A stretch of DNA of 64,000 bases from Styela clava (GCF_964204865.1 NC_135256.1:12834001-12898000); one strand, 5' to 3'. Shown: positions 6,239-36,498, counted from the first letter of the stretch. Notes: a model not told the origin generated them from the sequence alone. A program made the numbers and translations.

Positions 6239-6345
6239 ATGCAAGAAATAAATTTAGAACATCTTCAAGAAGACGAAGTTCAACTTATTCTAAAAGTATT
6301 GGAGAGAGATGCAAAGATACAAAAGCGAGAAGATGCACGGCGACG
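6239..6345 (+). CDS. Gene A coding exon 1: Slp-homology domain part 1 (SHD1, Rab27-binding helix) of a synaptotagmin-like/exophilin-5 (Slac2)-like protein
   Basis: Acceptor TTGCAG at 6211-6216, ATG at 6239. Reads MQEINLEHLQEDEVQLILKVLERDAKIQKREDARR, matching the SHD1 pattern (IDLSxLxEEExxxILxVLxRDxxLxxxExxR). Phase-2 donor CG|GTATGT. Confidence 0.88.
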
Positions 6346-6902
6346 GTATGTTAATTGATTGTGGTGCAAACGCGTATCAGCTTATAAATTTGTCTATAAC
6401 TAGGGATTTGTACAAAAAGAATTATTTTAAAACAATTGCTTCAAATCAAGTTTTTTTTTGCCTTTTTTTGTTCAAATGGCTGTACTCTTTGATTTTTTGT
6501 ATTAAATAGGTTGAAGAAAAATGGATGTAAAACTTGCCAAGCGCTTCTTATTTGCAATAAATCCTTCGAAACGCCACAAATATAGATAAAGGCCCATACA
6601 CACCTTCTCAAGCTGTAGTTCAGTGCGACCACAAACGTGGTTGTCGCAGTAAGACGCAACCGATGAGCCATTATGCGAACGACCCTGCGACGAAACCACC
6701 TTGCGAAAATTGAAATGCGATCAAATAAATGAATTTATATAACTTTGGAAAAATTCAATTACTTCAGCCTTAAGAACAAAGTATGCTGAGCATAAATAAA
6801 ATGAACAGTATTAACCGCAATTATGTCTACTGCGAGTGTCACTTAGCTAGTCTCCGAACTCGTAATAGAACTTAAATAAGGAAAATTGGAATAAAATTAT
6901 GG

Positions 6903-6965
6903 CCTAACATACACATACTACGTTCCGGTGTCCGCCATCATTGTGCACATACTTCTGGTGCGCCC
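6903..6965. mobile_element. MITE arm, related to 1373-1423 and 15041-15150
   Basis: CCTAACATACACATACTACGTTCCGGTGTCCGCCATCATTGTGCACATACTTCTGGTGCGCCC aligns by eye with the other copies. Confidence 0.6.
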
Positions 6966-7887
6966 CTTGATTTATGTCAATACATAAATTCAAAATCCTT
7001 ATTATGGTGTCAGGTGTCATAACAAATTAGTCTGGCGTCCTTGCATCAGAAGACTATTGCAATAAGCATAGCCTAGGTTAGGGTGTCTCCTCGTTTAAAT
7101 CAGTAGATTGCCGCCGATGTGAGTATATTCTTCATTATCGTAACGCACTCGTTTTGTCGAAGACTGTCCTTGATCCAATTGCTTTTGTGGTAGGCTCGTG
7201 AGCTAAATTTCATGATTTTTCTTACTCAAAACGTCTCTCTGGTATCTCGGATAAACATTCCGGTTACAATCTTATAACTTTGTTGTAAATACAAACGTTG
7301 CGAAAAATGTACGCAAGTCAAAACAAAAATTGTTACTTACGTTTTTGAAATTATAATTCCGGCAGCGTATGCAACGTTTTGGCTTAGTTTCGCGGCGATG
7401 CAAGGGGTACCTAAATGAAAAATACAGAAAAAATTGATTTAAAACAAGCCCTTGTTTTAAAACACGATATTTTTTTTAGAATTGATAAAAAAACAAAACC
7501 CTATCTATAACTATCTTTAGTTACCAACTAGCAGCCCCATTTTCAACACTGTTACCGCTTTCTAGCAGCTTCACTTTCTTTGGTATTTGGAAAATTACAC
7601 CAAACCAGTTACTAATATACAACCTACCTATTGTTTCTTAATCCGGGATCGCGGTTCATAATTTGACTCATACGACGGTAAAGATAAAACAAAATCGTGA
7701 GTTTATCTCAATCGTTTCATGGAAGCAGACAGTAAGCGTTGAGTTTTTCTGGATTAAAGCTATTGCATTAATGTTCGGTTGACTGTAAGAATGTGTATTA
7801 CATTTTCGAATATTGAAAACCATTCGCAGTTTTACTCAAATGCATAAATTCCCTGTTTGTTATCGTTTTTATATCTATTTCATTCAG

Positions 7888-8042
7888 GAGATTACAAAGC
7901 TCCATCAAAGGTGAAAGAATTCCTGAAAAGAGGTTGTCGATTCACATCAGAACAGGAGACTGGATGTCAGACATGACAGCAGCTACGCGCTCGCTTAAAA
8001 AAAGAGGAACAGATCTAGTGAGAGCTTCAATTAGGCGCAAAG
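7888..8042 (+). CDS. Gene A coding exon 2: SHD2 (155 nt)
   Basis: Acceptor CATTCAG, phase 2 in and phase 1 out (G|GTATAA). Reads RLQSSIKGERIPEKRLSIHIRTGDWMSDMTAATRSLKKRGTDLVRASIRRK, containing the SHD2 (S/T)GxW motif and the GxDLVRASIRRK helix typical of Slp proteins. Confidence 0.88.
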
Positions 8043-8673
8043 GTATAATTACCTTAGAGCAAATGATCTTCGATTGATATTAAATCACCCTAAATGATTT
8101 TCCTTCGCAAATATGACTTTAAAATCACCAGGCAGAGCAATCGATGAAATTGACCGTTGTATGACTGGCTTGATCCATATTGTGCCAGACCTACTTATTT
8201 TGTTTGTGCGTTGTGATTTTTGTTTTGAGCCTAATGTTTCTCCCTTCGGGACAGGTCCCGATCGTACAAACTCATTTACGCCGTACTCTTTTTACTTGCC
8301 CACTATAGAATAGAATAGATGCAACGTTAAAAAATAATTTCTAAAACTACTTATCGACCCATACCTAAATCTTATTTCTTCATTTGGAACATCTAAAATA
8401 AACACTTACATAGCAATGCTATTTATGACATGAGTCAGTAACTTGCTCACTTCCAATTTTGAGTAATTCACGATCGCGTTTCAGATAAATTCGTCTGTCT
8501 CAAATCTCATAATTATTGTGTTTACACTAACCACTAACCGATCACCCTATGCATTGTTAACATGGTACATCTTAGTGATTTAACAAAACAAATTAATTAC
8601 GAGTTTTTTTAAATTATCAAGTACGGTCACTTCTTTACGGCACTTAATGATTCAAACGATTTCTATGTTTCAG

Positions 8674-8730
8674 ATACGACAAAGTCAAATGACACCGACG
8701 GAGAAAAATTGGAATCCAAAAGTGCGCAAG
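8674..8730 (+). CDS. Gene A coding exon 3 (57-nt phase 1-1 microexon)
   Basis: TTTCAG acceptor and CAAG|GTAGTC donor. Reads DTTKSNDTDGEKLESKSAQ and keeps the frame between exon 2 and the terminal exon. Confidence 0.75.
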
Positions 8731-8984: not shown

Positions 8985-10864
8985 AGTCTGAACATATTGC
9001 TGAGAATGATCATGAGGGCCAAAAGTTTGGGACCAAACCCACAGCAATTGTCACTCCAACAAATAAATCACCTGTTAGGAGAACTTCGATTCGAAAAAAG
9101 AAAACATCATCTAAGCAAGAAAAACAGATCAAAGAGGTCAAATTTGACACTGACAAGACCGAAAAGTATATCTACGAACAGGCGAACCTTGAGACTGGTA
9201 GTCAGGAATCTTTATTAATAGATACGGATGTCAAGAAGGTACCAACTATTGTCATTGACGACAGCGATGTTGCATTGGAACTCGAGGACAAAATAAAAAA
9301 TTCTGACGATTCTGCAGAACTAGACAAGACTACAGATGAACCGGTCTCCTATGATGATAAGATCTATTCATCAAGTGCTACATTTGAAAATTTCCACAAT
9401 TCCATCGGAAAAGATATGCATAAACCAGACGAAAAAAATGAAGAAAACATCATTTCAGCTGATACACAAGGAAGCCCTAAAAGCGAGAAACCTGTCTCAG
9501 ATGAACCACTTACCGGCAAGAAAAAAATTCGAGTCGTGAAACGTAAAGGAAGTTCAAGAAGAAAACCAAGTCCTAAAATTACTGACGATAGCAGCCGTAA
9601 TACTCTCTTCAGCATGCCAGATGAAGAAAAGCCGGACCACGATAAATCAGACCTGAACAAAGAAACGGAGACTTTGCAGGATCAAGTGGAGGAAAATACC
9701 CACGGAGAGACTGATACTCCAATAGCTGAATTATCTTCCAAACCCGACGTTGTTGATATGGCTCCCATTGCTAAAAAGATACATGAAAATGTCCAGACAT
9801 CCTACTTAGCAGATCAAGACCCTGTTCAAGATCACAATGTAAAAGAATTAGTAGAAGAAACTGTGAAACCTTTGTTAAACTACGTCGACGAAATTGAAGT
9901 ACCAAAAGAGGAAAATGATAAGGAAGAATCTGTTTCTGAAATTGTACTCGACCAAATTAAGGATGTTCCAATAGCTGTTGATGTCTTCAAAACTGACACA
10001 AGTTATGTCGCCGAAGAAAAAATCGACGAACAGATCGCGAAAATATCAAAAGTTGAAAATGTAGCATTATTTGATGAAAAAGAAAACAAACAACAAGTCG
10101 AAGAACCTAATGTAGCTACAGAAGATAAAGGAAGCGTTAACCAAGATTTAACGGTAACGGTATTTGAAACCGTGAAACCAGTCGGAGCTATTGCTTTTGA
10201 TACATATGCTATAGCGGAGCAGGTGGATAAAAATAAAGATAACGAAGATACAAATGAAATGAACACCGACTTGGAACACCTGTCGGTCGATGAAAATAAA
10301 GAGAATAGGGACAAAAAAGAAACGAAAACGGACTTGGAAACTCAGATGGGAGATTTGTTGAGCTCAATGTCGGCTACATACGACTCTATGATGCCAAGTA
10401 TAGACAAAAAGGATCTTGATGAAGTTGTAGCTTCCCCCGAAAAGCATGAGTCACAGACTGAATCTATTGCCACCAAAGATTTTGCCTCATTAGAGAATAT
10501 ACAACAATATTCACCACAACAGGAAAATTTTAAGCTTTCACAAGATACAAACGGACAGGATATATCTGGTGAAACAATTGTGGGAAATTTGGTTGAGGAA
10601 GTGTTGAATACCACGGAGCCTATTGCGGCGGAAATCGAGGAGACATCTGAAGAAAAACCCACACATGACAAACCAAAGAAGAAAGTTGTCAAAAAAATTG
10701 TCAAGAAGAAAAAGGCAACAGATGAAGAACAAGGTTCACCAAAATCGGAGGGAGCTACAGGAAAAGAAAATGATGAAAATTCACCCAAAAATTTATCCAA
10801 ACTTTCGAGAACCAGAACCGTGCGAAAAAAGGTCGTAAGAAAACCACCCCCTCCTCAAACGTGA
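8985..10864 (+). CDS. Gene A terminal exon: acidic, low-complexity tail with polybasic clusters (whole protein about 732 aa)
   Basis: Polypyrimidine tract plus TAG acceptor (8982-8984), phase 1. The frame is open from 8985 into the 9275-10864 ORF, so the ORF track's TTG start is not the real start. E/D/K/T/S-rich, ending KKKVVKKIVKKKK...RTVRKKVVRKPPPPQT*. No C2 domain. Confidence 0.88.
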
Positions 10865-14827: not shown

Positions 14828-14940
14828 ATGGTATCTGAAAACATCGATCTTTCTTATCTGACGGTTGAAGAAAGGACAACGATTCTTAAAGTTCTAAACA
14901 GAGATGAGAAAATCAGAGAAACTGAGGAAAAAAGAGTCAA
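14828..14940 (+). CDS. Gene B coding exon 1: SHD1
   Basis: Acceptor CCTTGCAG (AG 14821-14822), ATG at 14828. Reads MVSENIDLSYLTVEERTTILKVLNRDEKIRETEEKRV, a near-canonical SHD1 (IDLSxLTxEExxxILKVLxRD). Phase-2 donor AA|GTATGA. A possible 5'UTR exon donor CAG|GTGAGA lies at 14057/14058. Confidence 0.92.
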
Positions 14941-16153: not shown

Positions 16154-16308
16154 AATACTTCGACGAAAGTCAGTGAACTTCGATAAAAAACAATTGACTT
16201 TTCTGAAAATATTTACTGGCGAATGGATAAAAGAGGTAGCAACAAGAGGCAAGAACTTCACTCTAGCAGCTAGTGGTCTCGTTAGGACACATCTCTTAAC
16301 AACAACCG
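16154..16308 (+). CDS. Gene B coding exon 2: SHD2 (155 nt)
   Basis: Acceptor TGCTTTAAG, phase 2 in, strong donor G|GTGAGT phase 1 out. Reads ILRRKSVNFDKKQLTFLKIFTGEWIKEVATRGKNFTLAASGLVRTHLLTTT with the TGEW motif. Same length and phases as gene A exon 2. Confidence 0.88.
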
Positions 16309-17117: not shown

Positions 17118-17168
17118 AAACAGTTACCACTGCACCGTTGGAAATCATAGAGACTACGACAGATATAA
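17118..17168 (+). CDS. Gene B coding exon 3 (51-nt phase 1-1 microexon)
   Basis: TCTGCAG acceptor and A|GTGAGA donor. Reads ETVTTAPLEIIETTTDI. Positional equivalent of the 57-nt microexon of gene A. Confidence 0.65.
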
Positions 17169-17603: not shown

Positions 17604-20600
17604 ACTACAAAAAATCCAATGATGCTTCAGATAAAGAGAAAATCAATACCACGATCCAAGAACAGTCCATCAACAGACCCAAGGACACTTCAGTAGTTGT
17701 TACCATAGACGTCAAAGGCAATGACGTGAAAATTACATCCAAAGTTGATACCACTGCACCCCAAACTTCTCAAATTGAAAATTTAGCCCAGGAAAAACAA
17801 CAAATAAGCTTCGACGAGCACATCGAAAAGAAACAGATAGCCGATAAGTCGTTCAGCGAAAGCGAAGAAAAAGGTTCTCCAAGTGCGAACGATCCCAAAG
17901 AAACATCTGAAATATCGAAAGAGTCTGAAACGCCACCAGAAAATCATTCGAATGAAGAAGATGATGATAAGGAAGGAAAAAGCAAAATCGCCGAATGGTT
18001 TTCAGACACGTTCTCCTCATGGAATATTGGGAAGGACAAAAAGGATGACGACCCCGATGAAGAGGCGAATGAAGAAACTATTGTACCAACAAACGTAAGC
18101 AATGAAAATGTACCGAAATCTGTTGGCGGAGACGAGAAAGAGACTAAAGATAAATTCGAAAACTTTGCGGACCTAATAAGCACTGAATTTGATTCGACTT
18201 TTGCCCGATTAGACGAAACTGTTGATAAAATCACCATAAAAGATTACGCAGAAAATGAGCCGGAGGTCGTTCCTGTCATTGTTCCATCCGAAGAGTATCA
18301 ACCAGATTTATTCGGAAGGTTACTCGCGCAACAAACTGATTACACACATACAACGGCGAAACAAGAACATATGCAGTATGAAAAAACACCCAATAAAATG
18401 AGTCACTTGGGTGATGAGTTCAACGACGCCGACGTTGACATATGTAGAAGTTTGGAAAGCATCACAGATGAACCGTGTGAGATTAACCTTTCAGATTTAC
18501 GCTCCGGAGATACAGTAGAAACGGAAGAAATTGTGTTATATGCAGCAACCAACGAAATATCTGCGACGACTACGCCATTTTTAGATGTTCATATTAGCAA
18601 TGTTATAGAAACCCAACAAACAATATCTGCAGAAAATTTGATTCTGTCTACTGATCAAGCAGAGGCAGACATAAACTCTCCAATTAAATCGGATAACGGT
18701 ACATTTTCATTTGAAAGCAAAAATACTGAATGGGTTGAAGACATTTCAACGTTTGAACATGTCACTGAAACTAATAGTGCGAATGTGTTAGAAAACGCTG
18801 ATTTGGCGAATGCTGACAGTATTTTTAGCAGTGATGGCCATAATGTCCAAACAACTCCTTATTTACCAATACCACTATACACCGATAATTTGGCTCCGAC
18901 AGGGTCAGTTTCAGATGATGGTTCATACGGAGATGATCCTCTTTCTCTTGTAGAATTTCTAGATTCCATACCATCAACAGATCAAAGCGAAGTGAAATTC
19001 GAAAACAAATTTGGCTTCGAAAAACAGTTATCTATTGACGAAATCACAAGTTCGCAATCGGTATTGAATGTGGTGGAAGATCTTCTGCACAATGTTGAAA
19101 AGTTGCAATTTGAAAGTGAGTTGGCCGATGAAATTTTGACTGAGGACAACGGTTCACAACTCACAAATCTCTTTATTAAAGACGAGGCCGATGATGACAA
19201 CATCAGCATTCCTGTGAAAGAAATATCGGAAAAGATGTCTTCAGACTCTGGTGATGTTCACGCTGTGAGTAATGTAATCGTTCATCCGAGCGAACAGGCA
19301 GGTGAAATAATTCAATCGCAAACCACAAATACATATAATGTAATTTCAGATTCGGCATTGAACCTTGCAGTCTCTCCATCTTCTGCCGAAAATAAAATCG
19401 CTGCACAATCAAAGGATCTAACATTGGATGAGTCAACTGAGCAAACCATTGACATAACGGATGTCGCTCAAGTACAGGAAGCATCCACCTCAGCGAACGT
19501 CAATGTATCTGCTGAACAAACAACAGTGATTCAATGTGACGATGATGGAAATGATTTATCATCCGAATACGACAACACAACAGCATATAATACATTTCCA
19601 CAATTTGCGATTCGTTCAGATGTAGATACATCAGAACAAAAGAAAATTGAAATCTATTCTCAAAAATCCAATGTTAAAGACATTCCACAAAACTATTTTC
19701 ACGATGATAACACCGACTCAGTATTACACAAAGAACACGATCCTGAACCAAGTTATGCTCCAGAAGATTATATCGACTCGACCGAAAAAATTCTTGAAAA
19801 ACAGATAGATATTACTAATATTGAAGCTTCGGCAATTTCTGAACAATCTCCACAAGGCTCAGTAGAAATACCGCTGCTTACGACTGAAGAAAGCAGCAGC
19901 TTAGTAATAACAGGTGAAACAATATTAGACCAAGATATCGAGGATTCCTCAAGTACAATTCCTAGCGAAAGCAACAGCCCTGATATGCCAACATACATGA
20001 AATTTACAGAATTCAGTGATATCACTATACCAGACACTGATTACAATGCTGGCTTTAAACCTCTATGCGAAGCAATAGAAGAAGAAGATGAAACTCAAAT
20101 AGAAGAATCTCCTATACAACCGAAAATTCCAACAATTTCTATATCAGACTATGACGAGGAGAAATACAGAGAATACAGTGAGCAGTTCGACAGTGATGAT
20201 TCTGAACTTTACATCAGCGAGGGGAATGATTATGAACAGTACTTTTATGATCAACAATACCATGTTGATGATGATGACACCATTCCACAATATTCAGATC
20301 CCAACAACGGCGGATTTGAATCCCATCCTGATGAGGAAGTCATCCTAGAGGAATCATATGATTACGGAGCTTCGGAAACTAGTTCACATACTATTACAGA
20401 TGTTCATGATGCAACTGGTGAAGTCAAAGATATGATAACAAATTACGAAACTCCCGGTAATCACGATTCTGATATGAGAATGAAAAGTGAATCCGATGAA
20501 GCATTAACAAGCACGAAAAAAATTGAAATTCCTGGAAGTGGACACAGAACAGAAGTGGAAAGTGATATTTCATATGATTTGCCGTTTGTAAATAACAATA

Positions 20601-23600: not shown

Positions 23601-26600
23601 GCGAAGGCGAAATAGATGGAACGTCGCAAAGGCTGGAAGAAGATATACCATTGGTCGAAAAGGTAGATGACTTCACTGGTAATGTAACAGACATTAGTCA
23701 ATCCATTCACAAAGACACCAGGGGTGTCGAAGAAAATACCGCATACCAAGAAAGCATGGGTTTTGATTACGATGCTGTCTTATCAGCTGAGTTAAATACC
23801 CAAGCTAATGATGGTGAGATTTCAAATTTAGCTGCTACGAAGAATCTCGATAGTACCAATGCAAATATGGAACAAAATACCGACTTTGAGAAAACTGAAC
23901 CGATTATTTCCGCTGGTTATCAACAAGAATTGGTAAAGGGAGTGGAAACCAATTTAAAAATGGGAACTGTCAGCCTTGAAAATGAAACTGCAAACTTAAC
24001 TCATACAGAAACATATGGCAGTAATGGTGCAGAAAAAAATTTTGTTAAAGATTTTAAAAACTCAGACGAAAATATCTCTATTAACGAGGAAGTCGAGGAA
24101 ACAGTCGTTGAGAGTAGCTTTACTCCAGTTGGAATTGATATCAACGAAACACACGAAAATGCAGACACGCTTTCGACGGACTATTCGAGTAGCGATCGAA
24201 AGCATGGCGAAAGGGTAGAAATTGATACTACACTTCCTGAGGTGTTGCCAATAGAACACGAACATGAGGACGACGTACACGCTCAAGATAGCTCAAATGA
24301 AGAAGGTATATATGGCAATGAAACCATAAATAATGAAAACAAAAATAATGATGGGCTAAAGGCAGCTAGCACTGAAAATGTAAATCAAGACCTCGCACTA
24401 TCTGTTGAAGAGGCAGTTGAGAATATTACTGGCCATGCTGAGGAAGATTCAAGCAAAAATCACGTGCACGTCAAAAATGTTGATATTGATACAACATTTT
24501 CTGAAGAATCGTCATTAAAAGACAGAGATTTACAAGCATATCTTAGCTCCAAGGAAGAACATGCAAGTGGCGAGCAAGAACCTAATGTTGTCATAATCAT
24601 GAAAACTGAAATGCTACTTGATAGCACTAAAGAACCCAATTTAGAAAAAGGTAATGTGGATTTGGAAAAAGAGAATGGAAGCCTAGAACGTGTTGATCTG
24701 GATAAAAATTCCAATGTCAATGCCAACCAAAATCTTCACGAAGACATTCAGATTTCCACAGAAAATATAATACCTCTCAAAATAACGAAGGAAACAAAAG
24801 ACGAAGATGATTTCACCAAACTGTCAGTGATTAACCAATCAACAAGTGAAAACATTGTCACTCAATCAATGCTATATTCAAGTAACGATCAAAATGACCG
24901 TGAACATAGAGATGTTGATACAGCGGATTCAAGTAATGAGCAAATACAAGTCGAACATATAGAAATTGAAGCAAATGTTTCCCAGGAGTTGCCAATAGAG
25001 CTGCAACATGATACTGGTATGCAAACACAATTTGGCTCCAATGAAGACCGCATAAGTGCCGGGGAAGAAACTGTTGTTGCCCAAAATATTAAAACGGAGA
25101 CAACCACTGATACTACAAAATCTGAACGGAAGAGTAAAAAAGTTGTTAAGAAAATTAAAAAACCGTCAGAAGATAACAAAAAGTCGGAATCGTCAATTAA
25201 AAAAGTCTCTGTTCGACGTAAAGTTGTTAAGAAGCCCAACGTTGCAATTAAACTGACAGATGCTGATCAAGGAGTAACTGAAATTGATGTTCCGGGTGAT
25301 GTTCCAAATCAACAAGAGTTGGCAAACGTGACAGAACCTGATTTGGCGAAAAAACCTGTTGATATGGACAACGAGATTGAAAACAAAACACATGTTGAGC
25401 TAGAAACATATAATACCGAGCAAGAAAAATCTTTGTCTGATGAAGTCATTAAAGACAAAGAGTTGATAAAAGATGGAGAAGCTGATTTGGAGATGAGTTC
25501 TGTTGACCTGAACAATGTGACTGATAACAAAACGCACGATCAGCTGCAAACATATCGCACTGATGATGTTAATCAAAATCTAGGCCAAGACTTTAATATT
25601 TCAGAGGAGTCTGCCGCGCCTCAGGATGTAAAGGATGAAGCAAAATTTGACGACAATTCTACCATAACCACAGTTGTTAACGACGAATCAAATGGAACCG
25701 TTACCGCATATTCGTTAGGTGAATCAAGTAATGACCTAATGCAAGTTGAACAAGACAAAACTGATACAAAAGTTTTCGAAGAGTTGCCGATAAATTCGCA
25801 AGATGATACGGACTTGCAAGCACAATTTGGCTCCAATGAAGATAGCATAAGCGCCGGGGAAGAAACTGCTGTTGCCCAAAATATTGAAACTGAGACAACC
25901 ATTGATACCACAAAATCTGAACGAAAAAGTAAAAAAGTTGTTAAGAAAATTAAAAAACCGTCAGAAGATAACAAAAATTCAGAATCACCAATTAAAAAAG
26001 TCTCTGTTCGAAGTAAGGTTGTTAAGAAACCAAACGTTGCAAATAAACTGACAGAAGAGAAGGTTGACAAAACTTATAATGAAAAAGATGCTGATCACGA
26101 AGAAACTGAAATTGTTGTTCCGGATGATGTTCCAAATCAACAAGAGTTGGCAAACGTGACAGAACCCGATTTGATGATAAAACCTGTTGATATGAACAAC
26201 GAGATTGAGAACAGAACACATGCTGAGCTAGAAACATATAATACTGAGAATACCATCCAAGAAAAACCTTTGTCCGATGAAATCATAAAAGACAAAGAGT
26301 TGATGAAAGATGCAGAAGCTGATTTGAAGATGAGTTCTGTTGACCTGAACAATGTGACTGATAACAAAACGCACGATCAGCTACAAACATATCGCACTGA
26401 TGATGTTAATCAAAATCTTGGCCAAGACTTCAATATTTTAGAGGAGTCTGCCGCGCCTCAGGATGTAAAGGATGAAACAAAATTTGACGACAATTCTACC
26501 ATAACCACAGTTGTTAACGACGAATCACATGAAAACGTTACCACATATTCGTTAGGTGAATCAAGTAATGACCTAATGCAAGTTGAACAAGACAAAGCTG

Positions 26601-29600
26601 ATACAAAAGTTTCCGAAGAGTTGCCGATAAATCCGCAAGATGATACAGACTTGCAAGCACAATTTGGCTCCAATGAAGATCGCATAAGCGCCGGGGAAGA
26701 TACTGCTGCTGCCCAAAATATTGAAAATGAGACAACCATTGATACCACAAAATCTGAACGGAAAAGTAAAAAAGTTGTTAAGAAAATTAAAAAACCGTCA
26801 GAAGATAACAAAAAGTTGGAATCATCAATTAAAAAAGTCTCTGTTCGACGTAAGGTTGTTAAGAAACCAAACGTTGCAAATAAAATGACAGAAGACAATG
26901 TTGATAAAACTTATAATGAAAAAGATGCTGATCAAGAAGAAACTGAAATTGTTGTTCCGGATGATGTTCCAAATCAACAAGAGTTGGCAAACGTGACAGA
27001 ACCCGATTTGGCAATTAAACTTGTTGATATGGATAACGAGATTGAGAACAAAACACATGTTGAGCTAGAAACATTTAATACTGACAATACAGACCAAGAA
27101 AAACCCTTGCTCGGTGAAGTCACAAAAGACAAAGAGTTGATAAAAGATGCAGAAGCTGATTTGAAGATGAGTTCTGTTGATCTGAACAATGTGACCGATA
27201 ACAAAGCGAACGATCAGCTACAAACATATCGCACTGATGATTTTAATCAAAATGTTGGCCAAGACTTCAATATCTCAGAGGAGTCTGCCGCGCCTCAGGA
27301 TGAAAAGGATGAAACAAAAATTCACGACAATTCTACCGTAGCCACGGTTGTTAACGACGAATCAAATGAAAACGTTACCGCCTATTCGATAGGTGAATCA
27401 AGTAATGAGCAAATGCAAGTTGAACCCATAGAAGTTGATGCAAAAGTTTCCGATGAGTTGCCGAAAGAACCGCAAGATAATACCGACTTGCAAGCACAAT
27501 TTGGCTCCGATGAAGATTGCATAAGCGCCGGGGAAGAGACTGCTACTGCCCAAAATATTAAAACTGAGACAACCATTGATACCACAAAATCTAAACGGAA
27601 AAGTAAAAAAGTTGTTAAGAAAATTAAAAAACCGTCAGAAGAAAACAAAAAGTTGGACTCACCAATCAAAAAAGTCTCTGTTCGACGTAAGGTTGTTAAG
27701 AAACCAAACGTTGCAAATAAACTGACAGAAGACGAGATTGACAAAACTTATAATGAAAAAGATGCTGATCAAAAAGAAACTGAAATTGTTGTTCCGGATG
27801 ATGTTCCAAATCAGCAAGAGTTGACAAACGTGACAGAACCCGATTTGGCGATAAAACCTGTTGATATGGACAACGAGATTGAAAACAAAACACATGTTGA
27901 GCTAGAAACATATAATACCGAGCAAGAAAAATCTTTGTCTGATGAAGTCATTAAAGACAAAGAGTTGATAAAAGATGAAGAAGCTGATTTGGAGATGAGT
28001 TCTGTTGACCTGAACAATGTGACTGATAACAAAACGCACGATCAGCTGCAAACATATCGCACTGATGATGTTAATCAAAATCTAGGCCAAGACCTTATTA
28101 TTTCAGAGGAGTCTGCCGCGCCTCAGGATGTAAAGGATGAAGCAAAATTTGACGACAATTCTACGATAACCACAGTTGTTAACGACGAATCAAATGGAAC
28201 CGTTACCGCATCTTCGTTAGGTGAATCAAGTAATGACCTAATGCAAGTTGAACAAGACAAAACTGATACAAAAGTTTTCGAAGAGTTGCCGATAAATTCG
28301 CAAGATGATACGGACTTGCAAGCACAATTTGGCTCCAATGAAGATAGCATAAGCGCCGGGGAAGAAACTGCTGTTGCCCAAAATATTGAAACTGAGACAA
28401 CCATTGATACCACAAAATCTGAACGAAAAAGTAAAAAAGTTGTTAAGAAAATTAAAAAACCGTCAGAAGATAACAAAAAGTCAGAATCCCCAATTAAAAA
28501 AGTCTCTGTTCGACGTAAGGTTGTTAAGAAACCAAACGTTGCAAATAAACTGACAGAAGAGAAGGTTGACAAAACTTATAATGAAAAAGATGCTGATCAC
28601 GAAGAAACTGAAATTGTTGTTCCGGATGATGTTCCAAATCAACAAGAAGTGGCAAACGTGACAGAACCCGATTTGATGATAAAACCTGTTGATATGGACA
28701 ACGAGATTGAGAACAGAACACATGCTGAGCTAGAAACATATAATACTGAGAATACCATTCAAGAAAAACCTTTGTCCGATGAAATCATAAAAGACAAAGA
28801 GTTGATGAAAGATGCAGAAGCTGATTTGAAGATGAGTTCTGTTGACCTGAACAATGTGACTGATAACAAAACGCACGATCAGCTACGCACATATCGCACT
28901 GATGATGTTAATCAAAATCTTGGCCAAGACTTCAATATTTTAGAGGAGTCTGCCGCGCCTCAGGATGTAAAGGATGAAACAAAATTTGACGACAATTCTA
29001 CCATAACCACAGTTGTTAACGACGAATCAAATGAAAACGTTACCACATATTCGTTAGGTGAATCAAGTAATGACCTAATGCAAGTTGAACAAGACAAAGC
29101 TGATACAAAAGTTTTCGAAGAGTTGCCGATAAATCCGCAAGATGATACAGACTTGCAAGCACAATTTGGCTCCAATGAAGATCGCATAAGCGCCGGGGAA
29201 GATACTGCTGTTGCCCAAAATATTGAAAATGAGACAACCATTGATACCACAAAATCTGAACGGAAAAGTAAAAAAGTTGTTAAGAAAATTAAAAAACCGT
29301 CAGAAGATAACAAAAAGTTGGAATCATCGATTAAAAAAGTCTCTGTTCGACGTAAGGTTGTTAAGAAACCAAACGTTGCAAATAAAATGACAGAAGACAA
29401 TGTTGATAAAACTTATAATGAAAAAGATGCTGATCAAGAAGAAACTGAAATTGTTGTTCCGGATGATGTTCCAAATCAACAAGAGTTGGCAAACGTGACA
29501 GAACCCGATTTGGCAATTAAACTTGTTGATATGGATAACGAGATTGAGAACAAAACACATGTTGAGCTAGAAACATTTAATACTGACAATACAGACCAAG

Positions 29601-32600
29601 AAAAACCCTTGTCCGGTGAAGTCACAAAAGACAAAGAGTTGATAAAAGATGCAAAAGCTGATTTGAAGATGAGTTCTGTTCATCTGAACAATGCGACCGA
29701 TAACAAAGCGAACGATCAGCTACAAAGATATCGCACTGATGATTTTTATCAAAATGTTGGCCAAGTCTTCAATATCTCAGAGGAGTCTGCCGCGCCTCAG
29801 GATGAAACAAAAATTCACGACAGTTCTACCGTAGCCACGGTTGTTAACGACGAATCAAATGAAAACGTTACCGCCTATTCGATAGGTGAATCAAGTAATG
29901 AGCAAATGCAAGTTGAACCCATAGAAGTTGATGCAAAAGTTTCCGATGAGTTGCCGGAAGAACCGCAAGATAATACCGACTTGCAAGCACAATTTGGCTC
30001 CGATGAAGATTGCATAAGTGCCGGGGAAGAGACTGCTACTGCCCAAAATATTAAAACTGAGACAACCATTGATACCACAAAATCTAAACGGAAAAGTAAA
30101 AAAGTTGTTAAGAAAATTAAAAAACCGTCAGAAGAAAACAAAAAGTCGGACTCACCAATCAAAAAAGTCTCTGTTCGACGTAAGGTTGTTAAGAAACCAA
30201 ACGTTGCAAATAAACTGACAGAAGACGAGATTGACAAAACTTATAATGAAAAAGATGCTGATCAAAAAGAAACTGAAATTGTTGTTCCGGATGATGTTCC
30301 AAATCAGCAAGAGTTGACAAACGTGACAGAACCCGATTTGGCGATAAAACCTGTTGATATGGACAACGAGATTGAAAACAAAACACATGTTGAGCTAGAA
30401 ACATATAATACTGACAATACAGACCAAGAAAAACCCTTGTCCGATGAAGTCACAAAAGACAAAGAGGTGATAAAAGATGCAGAAGATGATTTGAAGATGA
30501 GTCCTGTTGATCTGAACAATGTGACTGATAACAAAGCGCACGATCAGCTACAAACATATCGCACTGGTGATCTTAATGAAAATCTTGGACAAGACTTCAA
30601 TATCTCAAAGGAGACTGGCGCGCCTCAGGATGTAAAGAATGAAACAAAAATTGACTACAATTCTCCCGTAACCACAGTTGTTAACGACGAATCAAATGAA
30701 AACCTCACCGCATATTCGATAGGAGAATCAATTAAGGACCGAATGCAAGTTGAACATATAGAAATTGATGCAAAAGTTTCCGAAGAGTTGCCGATAGAAC
30801 CGCAAGATGATACAAACTTGCAAGCACGATTTGGCTCCGATGAAGATCGCATAAGCGCCGGGGAAGAGACTGCTGTTGCCCAAAATATTAAAAATGAGAC
30901 AACCATTGATATCACAAAATCTGAACGGAAAAGTAAAAAAGTTGTTAAGAAAATTAAAAAACCATCAGAAGATAACAAAAATATGGACTCACCAGTTAAA
31001 AAGGTTTCTGTTCGACGTAAGGTTGTTAAAAAGCCCAACGTTGCAATTAAACTAGGTGAAGACGAGGTTGTTAAAAGTAATAAGAAACAAGGGGGCGATG
31101 GTGAGGAAGCCAAAAATATCATCTCCGATGAGGCTCAGAATCAACATAAGTTGATAAACGTTGCAGAAATCAATTTGGAAATGCAGTCTGTTGATACGGA
31201 CAACGAGATTGAAAACAAAACACACATTGAGCCAGAAACATATTACACTGACAATGTCATTTTGAATCTTAGCCAAGATTTACAAAACCCCCAAAAATAT
31301 GCCTTGCTTGGTGAAGTAATTGATGAACCAAAAACAAAAGATAGATTAACCGAAACTGCGGCCACGATGGTCGAAACAAGCGATAACGTCACCGCCCAGA
31401 TTATGGAAGTTACAAGTAGTAATCAAATGCATGTAGAAAATGACACAATAGGGTCTGGGGAGTTGGCGATAAAACTTCAAGACGATAAGGATGTGCTAAC
31501 TCAAGTTGTATCTGCCGAAGAACGTACAGGTGACGAGCAAGAGATTGCTGACGCCAATAATATTGAAAGTGAAGCAAACATTGATACTACAAAATCTGGA
31601 CGGAAGAGTAGAAAAGTTGTGAAGAAAATTAAAAAACCATTAGAAGGTGACAAAAAATCGGATTCACCCCATAAGAAGATTTCCGTTAGGCGTAAAGCAA
31701 CAAAGAAACAAGGCGATGAAGTGAAAATTGCAGAAGACGAAGTTGCTACGGGTAATGCGGAAAATCAAGATGACCAAGAAAACTCTGAAACTACTATTTC
31801 TGATAAAGTGCAAAATCACGAAGAGTTGAATAAAGATGCAGGAACCGGATTGAAGAACGCTTTTGTTGACGTGGATAATGCGACTGATAACAAAGCATTT
31901 GATCAGCTCCAAACATATCTTACTGGGGATGACAATCAAAATCTTGTCCAGGACTCTGATATCACAAAGAAGTATGCCGTGCCCCAGGATGCAACGGGTG
32001 GCACAGAAATTGACGATAATTCAACCATAACCATAGTTACAGCAAATGAAAATGTTATCGCATATTCGACAAATGATTCAAGTAACGACCAAATGCAAGT
32101 AGAACAAATAAAATTCGATGCAATAGTATCCGAGGAGTTCCCGATGGAACTCCAAGGCGATATGGATGTAAAAGCACAAATTGTCTCAACTGCTGAAGAC
32201 CGCGTAGGCGGCGTGCAAGAGACTGCTGTTACCGAAGGTATTAATAAAGAGACTACCATTGAAATCATAAAACCTGATCGGAAGAGTAAAAAAGTTGTAA
32301 AGAAAATTAAAAAGCCAATGAATAATGACAATAAGTCTGATAACCCACCGAAAAAAATTTCGATTAGGCGCAAGATTATTAAGAAGCCAAAAGACACAGA
32401 GGACCCTAGTGAAGATGTGTCTGACATAATAGGTACAGAACAACAAACTATTGATGAAACTGAAAAAATGGCCCACACTGACATTCAAACTCCACAACAT
32501 GAGTTGTTGAAAGTTTCAGAAGGCAATTTACAAATAGATGCATCAGATCTAACTACAGACAATGAAAATAAAATAGACATTGATCAACAAGAACATAAAA

Positions 32601-33397
32601 GAGATGATCAAAATAATCACGATGATTTCCCAATGTCACCAGAACACGTTTTGCCTGATGAAGTACCCGATGATAAAAACGTCGTGATGAATCGCACTCA
32701 AAATTTAGACAAAGAAGAACAAGAAACGAATCAATCCTCGAATTTAAAAGCCGATCTACCGGACGGTGAAGAAGATATTGTTGCCGCAAACGAATCACTT
32801 CCCGAAACACTCAATTTGGAAAGTACCGCGAACGAACTACAAGCTACTGATGTTCACATAAATTTGACAGAAAAATCAGACAATTTGGAACTTGATGGAA
32901 CAGATCTAGATCCGTTGGCGACTGCCCAACTGCACGACGCCCATAGCACCAAGAAAATTGTCAAAAAAACGAAAACACTTTCCACAGCCGGGGAGAGTTT
33001 AAAAAAACCATCCATCAGGCGAAAGGTCATCAAGAAGAAAGAAAAATCAAACAAAGAAGTTTCTCAAGATGGCGAAATTGAAACTAGCAAAGAAAACCCC
33101 AAAGGGTCATCCGGAAATAAGGAGGGAGAGTATCTTATGGAAGAAATTGATTCCGGAACTAAAGCGTCAGTGCCTGTTGCAACAAGCTGTAATTTAACTC
33201 TAGAAACTACTTCTTCTAATCTAACCATGACGGAAGATGGAGGGGACATTGCTGAAGCAAAGCCATCTAAAAAAAGCATAAAGGTATTGAAGAAATCGGT
33301 GAAAAAAGACCTGGACGAAAAGGATTCGAACAAAGACGATTCCCCAACACCAAAGAAAAGTTCCACTCGCCGAAAAGTCGTAAAGCGCACAAAATAA
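17604..33397 (+). CDS. Gene B giant terminal exon (about 15.8 kb): acidic, probably disordered region with tandem repeats (whole protein about 5370 aa)
   Basis: Uninterrupted 5266-codon ORF with no ATG at its start. Phase-1 acceptor AAG at 17601-17603 with branch-like CTAAC at 17578; an alternative phase-1 CAG lies at 17628-17630. Repeat-unit length differences are all multiples of 3. Confidence 0.9.
24920..32560 (+). repeat. Coding tandem array of about 10 units (675-837 bp) with a 2.5-kb higher-order duplication
   Basis: The KKVVKKIKKP anchor recurs at 25142, 25937, 26774, 27611, 28439, 29276, 30104, 30941, 31616 and 32294 (spacings 795, 837, 837, 828, 837, 828, 837, 675, 678). Units 2-4 match units 5-7 at offsets 2502, 2502 and 2493. 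Confidence 0.95.
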
Positions 33398-33401
33398 TAA
33401 A
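33396..33401 (+). terminator. AATAAA overlapping the stop codon of the giant exon
   Basis: Sequence AAA TAA TAA AAC; the hexamer shares bases with the stop codon at 33395-33397. Confidence 0.3.
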
Positions 33402-33736
33402 ACTATGCACGGGAGGTGGACTTTTCAACTATGAACAAAGAACATATGATCAATTCCTTTCTGATATTAGTATATATTTCAAGAGGAAATACAACAAATA
33501 GCGCTGCACCAAACTATGGGGTTCTTTGTTTAACTTTAGTATATCTCTGATGAATATGAAATGGAGTCCAATAAGAACATGTCATTCTTAGCTTATAATT
33601 TGATATGGCAATCTACATGCCTGCTAAAGGCATATTTTATTTGACGACTAAGCCTCATTCAAGTGCGCCTGAGAGTTTCCTGGTTCTTCGGAACACTTTT
33701 GTGACAGGACATTAACGTTGTCCAATCTTTTTTCAG

Positions 33737-36498
33737 ATATGGTGAGAGGTGTAGCCGGTTTAGCAACTGACACATCCACTTCTATAGTGGCGGGTGCCGT
33801 TGGTGGTGTGGCAACTGTGGTCACCGGTATTGCGGAGACGGGAACACTTGCTGGTACTGGTGGAGCTGAGATTTTGGTGACTGGCGTGATGCGCACAGAT
33901 ATTATGTCAGACGGAGTCGTTGTAGAGGAATCTGCATTAGAAGCAGACATCGCGACAGTCAACGTTGATCAAGCCAGCACAGAAAGTGAGAAATATATTG
34001 TTGTTAAGCCGGCGAAAAAACGAATAAAAAAGAGCGTTCAGAATACAATTCACCAGAAAGAAGTCATAACTCCACAAACACAAGTATTAAAGAAAAAAAT
34101 CATCGTTGAAGATAATCTTGCAGAAAGCAAACCTCAAGTAGATTTGGTTAAAAAAGAAATTGTGATTCAGAATTTCATTCCATGCGAACCCAAAGTCCAA
34201 ATATTGGCAGAAAAAGAAATTTTGATTCAAAGGCCTTCAACACAAAAGCCAGCAATAACTATAGAAAGTGTCGCTGTTCAGATTGATGAAAACCCGATTA
34301 CACAAGACGGATATGAATGTGCTGAAGAGATTCTAATCAGGCAGGATGTAGTTTCGATCTCTGATTCTCAATCGGGGTCATTCTCATCAGAAGATAATCA
34401 GAGTTGTGATTCTCAATATGAAGTTTTGATTCAAGATGAGATTCTCTCTCACGCTGTGGATGAAAAACAAATATCAGAACAAAACCCTTTGGCTTTTAAA
34501 GAAGCAACAATTCAGATTGATAAGCAGATTATTTGTGACAGCGAAGACGATGCAGAACATGAAGAAATTTTGGTTTATGAGCAATTTACTTCGAATTCTG
34601 AATGCCAATCAGAAGATTCTTCTATTGGTATCCAGGTTCAGGATAATAATGCCTTTCAGTCAACCACGGAATTAGTTTCGGAAACTCAAGAGCAGACTAT
34701 GCAAGCGGGTGAAATACGGAAAGCAGTACAAGATATTATGATAACGTCGAAGGAAGCCACTAATGCAGCTCAGATCGATGTTCAGGAAATTGATGTTAAT
34801 TTCAACTCCAGCTCAAAGAAGAAAACTGGCATTGCAGGGTCGGCAGTTGGTATTATTGGAAACGTTTTCTCGTCTGCCAAGAATATATCTGTAGGTAAAC
34901 ATGCTGCAAAGATTGTAAATGGCGCCAAGGAAACAGTTGTCGGATTGATTCCTAGTGTTACTCCGCATGACGTGATCATATCAGCTTTTGATAATGAAGC
35001 CATCGTAGAGGTTGACAACAGTAGTAGTGGAACTAATATTGTTGAAGTTGTAAGTAGCACTACAAGGCTGCCTACAAGACTTTTCGAAATCGCAAACATT
35101 GGAGGAATTGTTGAAGGTGGGTCAAATATTGTGAATGCTGCTGTGACCGGGCCTGTTGAAATTACCAGCGGCGTAGTCGACGTAGTTGGAGTTGGGGGTG
35201 TGATCGAAAGTGGAAGGAACGTCGTTGGGAGAATTACAGAAGGTGGATCAAATATTTTACATGCTGCTGTGACCGGACCTGTTGAAATTACAAGCGGAGT
35301 AGTCGACGTAGTTGGAATTGGGGGTGTGATCGAAAGTGGGGGAAACTTGGTTGAATTCGCAACGGACACTGTAGGCGTAACCGATGGCATTAATAGCGTT
35401 GTTGAAATGGCAAGTATTGAAAGAGTCGTCGGCACTGGAGGAGATATTGTGGATGTCGTTGTTGATACCATTAATATTTCGGGTGATGGCATTGAAAGAA
35501 CAGAAATAGTGGAAGAAGTGATTGTTGATAGGGATTCCGAGCCAATTCAAATGCAACAAAATCTTGTAGCTTCTGCTGCACATAGAAAAGTAATAAAGAA
35601 AGCGAAAAAGGCTGGACAATTTCCTCCAGAAGAGCAAAGAGACATTGTGATACAAGAAAATCCGAACACACAAATCGGACAAGTTGTGGATCTCATAAAG
35701 CTACAAGACCAGGTAACAGTTGGTAAACAAATCAGCTCAGATGGTAAAGCAGTAACTGAAACCAAACAAATTTCACGAGACGTGGAACCATTGATTGCAA
35801 AAAATACTGAGGTCGTTAAAATTATACAAAAAGCACCAATGAAAACACAAAACGTTAGCCAGGGTGAAAAGAGAAAGAAAATTGTAAAAGCGGTACAAAA
35901 GCAAGATGCTCTGGTAACAATAAAAGAAAAGGGCAGTAAGGAACCGAACGAAAAAACGACACAGGTGAAAGCGATGCCGGTTCAAAAACAGAGCGTAAAG
36001 CGTAAAGTAGTAAAGAAAATTACCAAGAAAGTCAATCCCACAAAAGTCGTTGAAACAGCTACACAGCAAGAGTCCAAGATTATTCCAAAAGTTGTTATTC
36101 CTCTGGTCGATCAAAAAGTTATACCCGGTTCGAAAATAGTCCAAGGTAAAGTTCTATCAACTAAGGTAGTTACATTTGATGAGGATTTCCAAAGGAAAAT
36201 GGATGATGCTGAAATGGATAGACTGGAACGAATCGCCCAATCACAAGAAGTAGGTCAGACTTCTAAAGAAGTACAGCAACCAGCGGATGGCATCAAGTTG
36301 ACCCAAGAATCTCTCGTGGAAGAACTTGTAAGTCACGACGTTCAAGATGTCGTTTCTCAGATGTGGGATATGCTAGACGACGACTCTAATCAACAAGGAG
36401 AACAAAATATAGCTCAGACACAAACTGCAAAAAAATTGACAAAAGTAGTCAAAGTTGCTAAAAGCTCCATACCACAGCAAGCTGTCCACGTGAAGTAA
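33737..36498 (+). CDS. 2.76-kb coding exon: probable alternative terminal exon of gene B (isoform about 1026 aa), or a separate single-exon gene from ATG 33739
   Basis: 926-codon ORF. Strong acceptor TCTTTTTTCAG (33734-33736) with TTAAC upstream, in phase 1 like the gene B donors. Shares the KKVVKK-type basic motif (KRKVVKKITKK, RKVIKKAKK) with both other tails. V/G/E/Q/K-rich, with no recognisable folded domain. Confidence 0.8.
35113..35358 (+). repeat. 126-bp (42-aa) coding tandem duplication
   Basis: EGGSNI..AAVTGPVEITSGVVDVVG.GGVIESG.N starts at 35113 and again at 35239. Confidence 0.9.

What the first reader, a model, noticed from the sequence alone, without database searches (positions are those of the whole stretch)
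6239..36498. Hidden tandem pair of zinc-finger-less, C2-less Rab27-effector-like genes, one with a 15.8-kb exon
Seen: the three large orphan-looking ORFs are not standalone genes. Two sets of small upstream exons, absent from the ORF track, encode Slp-homology domains (SHD1 and SHD2). They splice in consistent phase (2, 1, 1) onto the large ORFs. Both genes share the plan SHD1 exon (107/113 nt coding), 155-nt SHD2 exon, microexon (57/51 nt), large terminal exon. Known: an SHD without the intervening zinc finger occurs in Slp1, Slp2-a and Slac2-b/exophilin-5, and Slac2 proteins lack C2 domains. Inference: this is a lineage-specific duplicated exophilin-5/Slac2-like module in which a conserved Rab-binding head is joined to very divergent tails of about 0.6k, 5.3k and 0.9k aa. 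It may be an undescribed giant secretory-granule tether or scaffold system.
Basis: partly seen in the sequence, partly recalled or inferred. Interest (0 to 1): 0.9.

Follow-up and report, generated by a model that had tools for sequence, protein, structure and literature searches.

The report
Tandem C2-less Rab-effector-like genes in Styela
Two neighbouring sea-squirt (Styela clava) genes join a small Rab-GTPase-binding head of the synaptotagmin-like-protein type to long disordered tails (732 and 5,370 residues) with no C2 domains; both are already in RefSeq as "uncharacterized proteins", so what is new is what they are, not that they exist.

Summary
All six predicted splice junctions match RefSeq models of Styela clava exactly. 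Gene 1 is LOC120328371 (732 aa). Gene 2 is LOC120327732 isoform X1 (5,370 aa); isoform X2 uses an acceptor 27 nt further on (17631). The genes are therefore not hidden, only unnamed.

The heads are Slp-homology domains (SHD1+SHD2) without a zinc finger. A profile of gene 1 and two ascidian orthologues found 81 proteins among 1.84 billion. Apart from a few ascidian relatives matched through the tail, they match through their N-terminal SHDs. Those I looked up are SYTL1/SYTL2 or Ciona "RabBD domain-containing protein". No C2 exon lies in the window or for megabases downstream, and orthologous transcript-sized contigs end at the same C-terminus.

Exophilin-5 orthology is not shown; the named relatives are Slp1/Slp2-type. 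The tails share only a bipartite polybasic motif (KKVVKKIKKP…RRKVVKKP). It occurs once at the end of gene 1 and about 13 times in gene 2, mostly in a 276/279-aa repeat.

The third ORF (33737-36498) is certainly coding but is in no database protein I could find. It may be an alternative last exon or a separate trans-spliced cistron.

Verdict: a real, moderately interesting new variant of the Slac2-type Rab effector. Other first-reader notes of this scan cover the same stretch; none covers other DNA.

The parts
6239..6345 (+). Gene 1 (LOC120328371) coding exon 1: start codon plus the SHD1 helix. An AG acceptor at 6215-6216 lies 22 nt upstream of the ATG.
   Evidence: Equals aa 1-35 of XP_039250768.2. 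Pfam FYVE_2 positions 2-28, E 0.016. AF2 helix 11-44 with pLDDT about 90.
7888..8042 (+). Gene 1 exon 2: SHD2 (…RTGDWM…VRASIRRK).
   Evidence: Equals aa 37-87. Conserved in three ascidian orthologues. Matches the TGxWF…RASIRxKK consensus of 78 SHD proteins.
8674..8730 (+). Gene 1 microexon (57 nt).
   Evidence: Equals aa 89-106.
8985..10864 (+). Gene 1 terminal exon: 625-aa acidic, disordered tail with conserved islands. It ends in the bipartite polybasic motif KKKVVKK…RKKVVRKPPPP plus the stop codon. ATTAAA at 11263.
   Evidence: Equals aa 108-732. No Pfam domain. Orthologues P0005 and P0006 end at the same place. 590 of 732 residues have pLDDT below 50. Poly(A) signal.
14828..14940 (+). Gene 2 (LOC120327732) coding exon 1: start codon plus SHD1. 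An AG acceptor lies 5 nt upstream of the ATG.
   Evidence: Equals aa 1-37 of XP_077970289.1. FYVE_2 positions 2-29, E 0.0029. Also hit in the whole-genome FYVE_2 scan.
16154..16308 (+). Gene 2 exon 2: a divergent SHD2 (…FTGEWI…LVRTHL).
   Evidence: Equals aa 39-89. Aligns to the gene 1 family head over 81 columns, hhalign 87%, E 3.9e-6.
17118..17168 (+). Gene 2 microexon (51 nt).
   Evidence: Equals aa 91-106.
17604..33397 (+). Gene 2 giant terminal exon (15.8 kb, 5,263 codons). An alternative acceptor at 17631 gives isoform X2. AATAAA at 33396 overlaps the stop codon.
   Evidence: No Pfam domain. Composition is E/D/S/K/T-rich.
25100..31400 (+). Tandem repeat array inside the giant exon (approximate bounds). 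The unit is 276/279 aa. A higher-order unit of 834 aa is nearly 100% identical. Each unit carries one bipartite polybasic motif.
   Evidence: Autocorrelation peaks at offsets 279, 555 and 834 aa. Motif positions and contexts.
33737..36498 (+). Third large ORF ('tail 3'). A strong acceptor (…ttttttcag|) in phase 1 is followed directly by ATG at 33739, giving 919 codons. The sequence is V/I/Q/G-rich with one clear KRKVVKKITKK motif. ATTAAA at 36571. Whether it belongs to gene 2 is unresolved.
   Evidence: chance of 941 stop-free codons about 4e-31. Single copy in the genome. No database protein of 505-1,608 aa. No BLAST similarity to tails 1 or 2. Poly(A) signal.

Best explanation
The window is Styela clava chromosome-scale contig C8. 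It holds two tandem, same-strand paralogous genes. [quoted passage not shown] That exon encodes an acidic, intrinsically disordered tail with no C2 domains, which is a Slac2-type architecture.

Shown:
- The exon structure and its identity with the RefSeq models.
- Homology of the heads to SHDs.
- Absence of C2 domains.
- Conservation of gene 1 in other ascidians.
- Expansion of gene 2 by a 276/279-aa tandem repeat.

Inferred mechanism:
- The head docks on a GTP-bound exocytic Rab (Rab27, Rab3 or Rab8 class) on a vesicle.
- The tail carries 1 (gene 1) to about 13 (gene 2) copies of a bipartite lysine/arginine-valine motif. These copies bind anionic membrane lipids or the cortical cytoskeleton multivalently, doing the job that C2 domains or actin-binding regions do in Slp and Slac2 proteins.

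The third ORF is a real coding sequence. It is either an alternative last exon for these heads or, as I think slightly more likely, a separate downstream cistron whose acceptor-plus-ATG start receives a spliced leader.
For: - Exon-by-exon identity with XP_039250768.2, XP_077970289.1 and XP_039250012.2.
- SHD homology. The only PDB sequence hit at E<=10 is the Slp2-a SHD from the Rab27A complex, 3BC1_B (E 0.059). The profile search of 1.84e9 proteins gave 81 hits at E<=1e-3. Most align profile positions 4-90 to residues about 2-80 of the target. Of 76 hits scanned, 70 carry FYVE_2 and 45 carry C2. Names are SYTL1/SYTL2 and Ciona RabBD proteins. The consensus of the hits is the classic SHD1/SHD2 pattern.
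- The sub-threshold Pfam scores (15-19 bits) are expected. Genuine Slp2 proteins reach only 20-30 bits on FYVE_2 positions 2-48.
- C2-less. No PF00168 candidate lies on C8 between 12.52 and 17.9 Mb, even at E<=10. Orthologues on 2.2-3.1 kb contigs carry head, tail and stop.
- Paralogy of the heads.
- Disorder.
- Motif and repeat structure.
- The next + strand gene is a glypican at 50.7 kb.
Against: - No binding data exist, and no complex could be predicted. A Styela Rab27 model would need joined exons, which I did not build.
- Pfam FYVE_2 stays below its gathering score.
- Gene 2's SHD2 is degenerate. It has W-I instead of W-F and LVRTHL instead of VRASIR, and it sits on a very long branch, so it may have lost Rab binding.
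- The SHD2 helix is not confidently predicted by AF2.
- The role of the polybasic motif is pure inference. It could equally be a nuclear-localisation-like or calmodulin/kinase site.
- No RNA evidence of my own. I rely on RefSeq models and on unnamed Logan contigs.
Confidence: 0.7

Rival explanations
1. The heads are evolutionary relics of an SHD that no longer bind Rab GTPases. The proteins act through their disordered, charged tails alone, for example as cytoskeletal spacers, condensate scaffolds or nuclear/chromatin polyampholytes that use the KKVVKK/RRKVVKK motifs as localisation signals.
For: Gene 2's head is very divergent: end branch 3.7 substitutions per site, odd composition, and the F after the SHD2 tryptophan and the RASIR motif are lost. 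The motifs resemble classical basic localisation signals. The tails make up more than 85-98% of the proteins.
Against: Gene 1's head is the best-conserved part of the protein across three ascidians. Nearly all positions that are invariant across the SHD family are retained. That argues for purifying selection on the Rab-binding surface. The head keeps the same exon plan in both paralogues.
Confidence: 0.17
2. The whole 6.2-36.5 kb stretch is one complex transcription unit. Two alternative SHD head cassettes are spliced combinatorially to three alternative terminal exons (tails 1, 2 and 3), all in phase 1.
For: All three tail acceptors (8985, 17604/17631, 33737) accept phase 1, and both microexon donors leave phase 1. 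Everything is on the same strand with short spacing. Slp genes such as Drosophila btsz make many isoforms (PMC10153138).
Against: RefSeq models two separate genes, and only head 1+tail 1 and head 2+tail 2 were found. Gene 1 orthologues exist as self-contained transcript-sized contigs in other species. Each unit has its own ATG just after an AG acceptor and its own poly(A) signal. No head+tail 3 protein (about 1,026 aa) is in the database. Phase agreement has a 1 in 3 chance.
Confidence: 0.1
3. For tail 3 only: it is an independent gene, monocistronic or the downstream member of an operon with gene 2. Its 5' end is made by spliced-leader trans-splicing at the unpaired acceptor 33736|33737, and it is translated from ATG 33739. 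It is unrelated in function to the SHD genes.
For: The first complete codon after the acceptor is ATG, and the same 'AG then ATG within 2-22 nt' layout begins genes 1 and 2. About half of Ciona genes are SL trans-spliced at unpaired acceptors, and operons are common (PMC1488885, PMC2760879). Gene 2 has AATAAA at its stop, 340 nt upstream. Tail 3 differs in composition (V/I/Q/G-rich) and has no BLAST similarity to tails 1 or 2.
Against: Ciona operons usually have no intercistronic DNA (PMC1488885), whereas the gap here is 340 nt. No stand-alone 919-aa protein is in the database. Tail 3 carries a KRKVVKKITKK motif like the other tails.
Confidence: 0.5

Closest known systems
Slp1/JFC1 and Slp2-a (SYTL1, SYTL2), vertebrate synaptotagmin-like proteins
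   Same: They are the nearest relatives of the head by sequence. They share a contiguous SHD1+SHD2 without a zinc finger, at the extreme N-terminus, followed by a long, poorly conserved, partly disordered linker. The Slp2-a SHD is the only PDB sequence hit. In these proteins the SHD binds Rab27A in a GTP-dependent manner (PMC2329822).
   Different: Slp1 and Slp2 end in tandem C2A/C2B phospholipid-binding domains. The Styela proteins have none and instead end in polybasic motifs. Gene 2 is 3-10 times longer.
Exophilin-5 / Slac2-b (EXPH5)
   Same: The same architecture class: an SHD-containing Rab27 effector without C2 domains (PMC2329822), with most of the protein encoded by one very large last exon. 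Disease mutations from c.1395 to c.3650 all lie in exon 6 (PMC4695416). That its SHD lacks a zinc finger is from my own knowledge of Fukuda's work and was not checked here.
   Different: No sequence evidence of orthology. None of the 20 profile hits whose names I looked up is EXPH5. The tails share nothing detectable. EXPH5 has no periodic polybasic repeat that I know of.
Drosophila Bitesize (Btsz), the fly Slp
   Same: An invertebrate Slp-family gene with many isoforms (nine, by alternative splicing). Its C-terminal half binds and bundles F-actin directly (PMC10153138). This is a precedent for Slp-family tails acting on the cortex or cytoskeleton. That Btsz also has very large exons and long linkers is from my own knowledge and was not checked here.
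   Different: All Btsz isoforms keep the C2 domains that localise it to membranes (PMC10153138). The Styela genes have none.
Slac2-a/melanophilin and Slac2-c/MyRIP
   Same: SHD head, no C2 domains. The tail links a Rab27 vesicle to myosin or actin (PMC2329822).
   Different: Their SHD contains a FYVE-type zinc finger between SHD1 and SHD2. The Styela heads have no cysteine motif there. No myosin-binding region is recognisable.
Ciona 'RabBD domain-containing proteins' (UniProt F6U481_CIOIN, H2YI84_CIOSA)
   Same: Tunicate proteins with the same zinc-finger-less head (profile E 3e-16 and 7e-14) and no C2 in the available sequence.
   Different: Only fragments or short models are available (153-414 aa). 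The tails are not alignable. They are named automatically and have not been studied.

Membership tests
SHD / RabBD superfamily (Slp, Slac2, rabphilin heads) | N-terminal SHD1 helix with the pattern (D/N)L..L(T/S)..E...I..VL.RD..(L/I) | tested here: met
   Present in both genes. FYVE_2 positions 2-29 matched. 3BC1_B is the only PDB hit. The nearly invariant columns of 78 SHD proteins are retained.
SHD / RabBD superfamily (Slp, Slac2, rabphilin heads) | SHD2 with (S/T)GxW(F) and a following …(I/V)RAS(I/M)R… motif | tested here: met
   Gene 1 has RTGDWM…LVRASIRRK, conserved in its orthologues. Gene 2 meets this only partly: TGEWI…LVRTHL.
SHD / RabBD superfamily (Slp, Slac2, rabphilin heads) | Statistically significant profile match to accepted members | tested here: met
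   81 hits at E<=1e-3 in 1.84e9 proteins. SYTL1/2 proteins reach about 2e-9. 70 of 76 scanned hits carry FYVE_2.
SHD / RabBD superfamily (Slp, Slac2, rabphilin heads) | Pfam FYVE_2 (PF02318) above its gathering score of 27.2 bits | tested here: not met
   15.2-19.3 bits. The model is built around the zinc finger. Ten relatives were scanned: the eight vertebrate Slp2-type proteins score 19.9-30.1 bits and the two tunicate relatives 21.5-21.9 bits.
SHD / RabBD superfamily (Slp, Slac2, rabphilin heads) | GTP-dependent binding of Rab27, Rab3 or Rab8 | not testable with these tools
   Needs a pull-down. A complex prediction would need a spliced Styela Rab27 model, which I did not build.
Synaptotagmin-like proteins (Slp1-5) | Tandem C2A and C2B domains at the C-terminus | tested here: not met
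   No C2 in any ORF piece or in the RefSeq and orthologue proteins. No PF00168 candidate on C8 between 12.52 and 17.9 Mb at E<=10.
Slac2 (Slp homologue lacking C2 domains), architectural class | SHD at the N-terminus and no C2 domains | tested here: met
   See the rows above. The stop codons of genes 1 and 2 are followed by poly(A) signals. Orthologues end at the same position.
Exophilin-5 / Slac2-b orthologue | The SHD groups with EXPH5 rather than with SYTL1/2 in sequence comparison | tested here: inconclusive
   No EXPH5 among the 20 named hits. The head tree is unresolved at its base and contains no EXPH5, MLPH, MYRIP or SYTL3-5 sequences.
Slac2-a / Slac2-c (melanophilin, MyRIP) | FYVE-type zinc finger (two CxxC pairs) between SHD1 and SHD2 | tested here: not met
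   SHD1 and SHD2 are separated by about 15 residues with no cysteine. In contrast, the Styela loci on C9 and C19 do have CxxC exons.

The most novel reading that the evidence does not exclude
A chordate lineage has rebuilt the Slp-type Rab effector. It dropped the C2 domains and instead strung 1 to about 13 copies of a bipartite polybasic module along an acidic, disordered chain of up to 5,370 residues. The result would be a giant multivalent tether linking Rab-marked vesicles to anionic membrane or cortical cytoskeleton. The tail may be swappable through a third, unannotated terminal exon. The near-identical 834-aa higher-order repeats would show that the tether's length and valency are still evolving.
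Probability: 0.15. Interest if true: 0.6.

Novelty: new variant of a known kind. Interest (0 to 1): 0.35.

Why it matters
It gives a function-level name (SHD/RabBD head, Slac2-type architecture) to two RefSeq 'uncharacterized proteins'. One of them is among the largest predicted proteins of an ascidian.

It also shows that tunicates carry C2-less relatives of the Slp1/Slp2 branch. If the periodic polybasic motif proves to be the membrane or cytoskeleton anchor, this would be a natural example of a folded C2 lipid-binding module being replaced by multivalent short linear motifs. That would be useful for understanding how vesicle tethers set reach and avidity.

The third ORF is a 919-codon coding sequence that I found in no database protein, so it may be missing from the annotation.

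None of this overturns current views of Rab27 effectors.

Tried and rejected
- Joined exon models. Spliced sequences came only from database proteins (P0001, P0003, P0007).
- Complex prediction of head with Rab27.
- AF2 of gene 1. Only the SHD1 helix is confident, which is too little for a meaningful fold search.
- AF2 of tail 3 as a single sequence. Mean pLDDT 31, uninformative.
- ESM Atlas on the gene 1 head. Best scores were 0.77/0.76 (one cluster named 'RabBD domain-containing protein'), which is below the level that counts. The second Atlas call failed on length.
- Searching the genome with profile A1. It found only gene 1 itself and missed even gene 2, so it is too insensitive to count SHD paralogues.
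- Head phylogeny. The base is unresolved and gene 2 is on a very long branch. It supports no orthology statement.
- A donor near the end of the giant exon that could splice to 33737. The only decent phase-1 donors are 1.7-1.9 kb upstream of the stop (31529, 31646), and no such protein is in the database, so I rejected this as the likely structure.
- The 51-aa sub-repeat noted by another reader. It gives no signal in simple identity autocorrelation.
- TRF cannot see the 837-nt period because its longest period is 500.
- Pfam on the 154-aa ORF at 14293-14757: nothing.


Full report
**Where we are.** The window is G000:C8:12,834,001-12,898,000 (+) of a 377-Mb assembly. Protein searches identify it as the ascidian Styela clava. 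The region is AT-rich (about 35-40% G+C). A strong A-over-T skew runs across 18-36 kb, where the large ORFs lie.

**Checking the observation.** I translated the whole-codon part of each exon by reference and looked for it in the database proteins that the large ORFs retrieved.

- For gene 1, the four pieces occupy aa 1-35, 37-87, 89-106 and 108-732 of XP_039250768.2 (LOC120328371, 732 aa).
- For gene 2, they occupy aa 1-37, 39-89, 91-106 and 108-5370 of XP_077970289.1 (LOC120327732 isoform X1).
- Isoform X2 (5,361 aa) differs only by using the acceptor at 17631, 27 nt downstream.

So all six junctions, the phases (2, 1, 1) and the exon sizes are right. But the genes are already modelled by NCBI, both as "uncharacterized protein".

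**What the heads are.**

- Exon by exon, both SHD1 exons hit the first 28-29 positions of Pfam FYVE_2, the Rab-binding domain model, at E 0.016 and 0.0029.
- The full RefSeq gene 1 protein and its orthologues reach 15-19 bits, below the 27.2-bit cut-off. This is not evidence against membership. Real vertebrate Slp2-type proteins, which lack the zinc finger the model is built around, score only 20-30 bits on the same positions.
- A profile of gene 1 plus two orthologues (alignment A1) gave a single hit at E<=10 against all PDB sequences. That hit is the Slp2-a SHD crystallised with Rab27A, 3BC1_B, at E 0.059.
- Against 1.84 billion representative proteins, the profile gave 81 hits at E<=1e-3. 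Apart from a few ascidian relatives matched through the tail, these align profile positions about 4-90 with residues about 2-80 of the target.
- The consensus of the hits is the textbook SHD1/SHD2 pattern followed by two C2 domains.
- Of 76 hits scanned, 70 carry FYVE_2 and 45 carry C2.
- The 20 whose names I looked up are SYTL1, SYTL2 or SYTL2-like proteins of vertebrates, two Ciona "RabBD domain-containing proteins", and unnamed Logan contigs.
- SHD1 and SHD2 are contiguous in the alignment and no cysteine motif lies between them. The head is therefore of the zinc-finger-less Slp1/Slp2 type.
- AlphaFold predicts the SHD1 helix (residues 11-44) with pLDDT about 90 and leaves almost everything else unstructured.
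- Gene 2's head aligns with gene 1's over both SHD halves: BLASTP 33% over 79 aa, E 4e-7; hhalign 87%, E 3.9e-6. It is much more divergent, with a very long branch, and has lost part of the SHD2 signature.

**No C2 domains.**

- None of the large ORFs has any Pfam domain.
- A six-frame scan of the whole genome with PF00168 listed all 103 candidates at E<=10. None lies on C8 between 12.52 and 17.9 Mb.
- The next gene on the + strand is a glypican, with an exon at 50,674-50,931.
- Three gene 1 orthologues (693, 679 and 661 aa) come from Logan contigs of only 2.2-3.1 kb. Two of these contigs carry the whole protein from head to stop, and those two proteins end at the same ...RKKVVR(R/K)xPPP C-terminus.
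- The Styela genome also has zinc-finger-type RabBD genes next to C2 exons on C9, C19 and C3. The window genes are therefore additional members, not the species' only Slp-like genes.

**The tails.**

- All three are low in aromatic and cysteine residues. Tails 1 and 2 are E/D/K/S/T-rich.
- Tails 1 and 2 share no BLAST-detectable similarity. They do share a bipartite motif, K-x-KKVVKKIKKP, about 16 residues, then (V/I)S(V/I)RRKVVKKP.
- The motif closes gene 1 (conserved in the orthologues) and closes gene 2. It occurs about 13 times in gene 2.
- Most copies sit in a 276/279-aa tandem repeat over residues about 2,600-4,700. An 834-aa higher-order unit in this array is almost 100% identical between copies.
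- An older database version of the protein is 5,008 aa, so copy number differs between assemblies or haplotypes.
- Gene 1's tail also has several islands conserved across ascidians, for example ...TEKYIYEQ......ATFESYHNSIGKDM... and ...KKKIRVVKRKGSSRRKPxPKITDDSSRNTLF.

**The third ORF.**

- 33,737-36,498 is coding beyond doubt. The chance of 941 stop-free codons here is about 4e-31. It is single-copy.
- Its acceptor is strong, in phase 1 like the other tail acceptors, and is followed immediately by ATG.
- Donors just before gene 2's stop are in phase 0 and cannot feed it. The only fair phase-1 donors are 1.7-1.9 kb upstream.
- No database protein of 505-1,608 aa contains it. The two RefSeq isoforms of gene 2 end at the giant exon's stop, where an AATAAA sits.
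- Genes 1 and 2 also begin with an AG acceptor a few nucleotides before the ATG. This is the layout of spliced-leader trans-spliced genes, which make up about half of Ciona genes. However, Ciona operons usually lack any intercistronic DNA (PMC1488885), and here the gap is 340 nt.
- I rate 'separate trans-spliced cistron' at about 0.5, 'alternative terminal exon' lower, and 'silent ORF' lowest. A single-sequence AF2 model was uninformative.

**How it most likely works.**

- Shown: the gene structure, the SHD homology, the lack of C2, the disorder, and the motif periodicity.
- Inferred from the family: SHDs of Slp/Slac2 proteins bind Rab27A in its GTP form, and Slps then bind membranes through C2 domains (PMC2329822). 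The Drosophila Slp Btsz also binds F-actin directly (PMC10153138). By analogy, the head recruits the protein to a Rab27-, Rab3- or Rab8-positive vesicle. The polybasic, valine-spaced motifs supply multivalent electrostatic attachment to anionic membrane or cortical filaments. The acidic disordered chain acts as a long spacer.
- Gene 1 is the conserved, probably ancestral form. Gene 2 is a fast-evolving, repeat-expanded paralogue with no detectable counterpart of similar length in the protein database.

**Comparison with known families.**

- By sequence, the heads are nearest to Slp1/Slp2.
- By architecture, the proteins fall in the Slac2 class and most resemble exophilin-5/Slac2-b. EXPH5 is also an SHD protein without C2 domains, and its disease mutations from c.1395 to c.3650 all lie in one exon (PMC4695416).
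- Orthology to EXPH5 is not shown. Membership of the Slp family proper fails on the C2 criterion.

**Verdict.** This is a correct and careful observation of real genes. It is overstated on novelty, because the models and an automatic RabBD label already exist. It is unproven on EXPH5 kinship, on the third tail and on function.

Noticed in passing
window 6400-7500 (intron 1 of gene 1): A two-part interspersed repeat with more than 90 copies across the genome at 75-87% identity. Probably a SINE- or MITE-like element.
   Followed up: no
window 50674-50931 (+): An exon matching the N-terminal part of Pfam Glypican (PF01153, E 7e-9). It marks the next gene downstream on the same strand.
   Followed up: partly
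window 17604 vs 17631: Two alternative acceptors 27 nt apart for the giant exon. Both are annotated, as isoforms X1 and X2. The upstream one has a poor polypyrimidine tract.
   Followed up: yes
window ~25100-31400: Nearly 100% identical 834-aa (2.5-kb) higher-order repeats inside the giant exon. An older database version of the protein is 362 aa shorter, which suggests copy-number variation or assembly collapse.
   Followed up: partly
window 35113-35339: A 126-nt (42-aa) tandem repeat, 1.8 copies at 92% identity, in the Gly/Val-rich middle of the third ORF.
   Followed up: no
window 14293-14757 (+): A 154-aa ATG ORF ending 70 nt before gene 2's first coding exon. No Pfam match. Its meaning is unknown.
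   Followed up: partly
G000:C16:536207-536365 (-), locus L005: Another SHD1-type first exon (MGRKLDLGSLTEEEEKIILQVIKRDYTVRKVE…). There is no large ORF in the fetched 9-kb locus (6 kb of it downstream) and no C2 candidate within about 0.67 Mb on C16. Possibly a further C2-less SHD gene.
   Followed up: partly
G000:C9:13545893-13563180 (-), loci L001/L003; G000:C19:11459025-11479375 (+), locus L004; G000:C3:1231092-1246367 (+): Zinc-finger-type RabBD exons (CxxC pairs, SGAWF/Y) with C2 exons downstream. These are the species' Slp3-5-, rabphilin- or RIM-like genes.
   Followed up: partly
G000:C1:20943840-20946452 (-): A 1,039-aa open frame carrying the best FYVE_2 match in the genome (positions 2-89, E 3.7e-10). 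A second piece (positions 89-116) lies about 2.3 kb further on in the same frame. This is an unusually split or very long RabBD protein.
   Followed up: no
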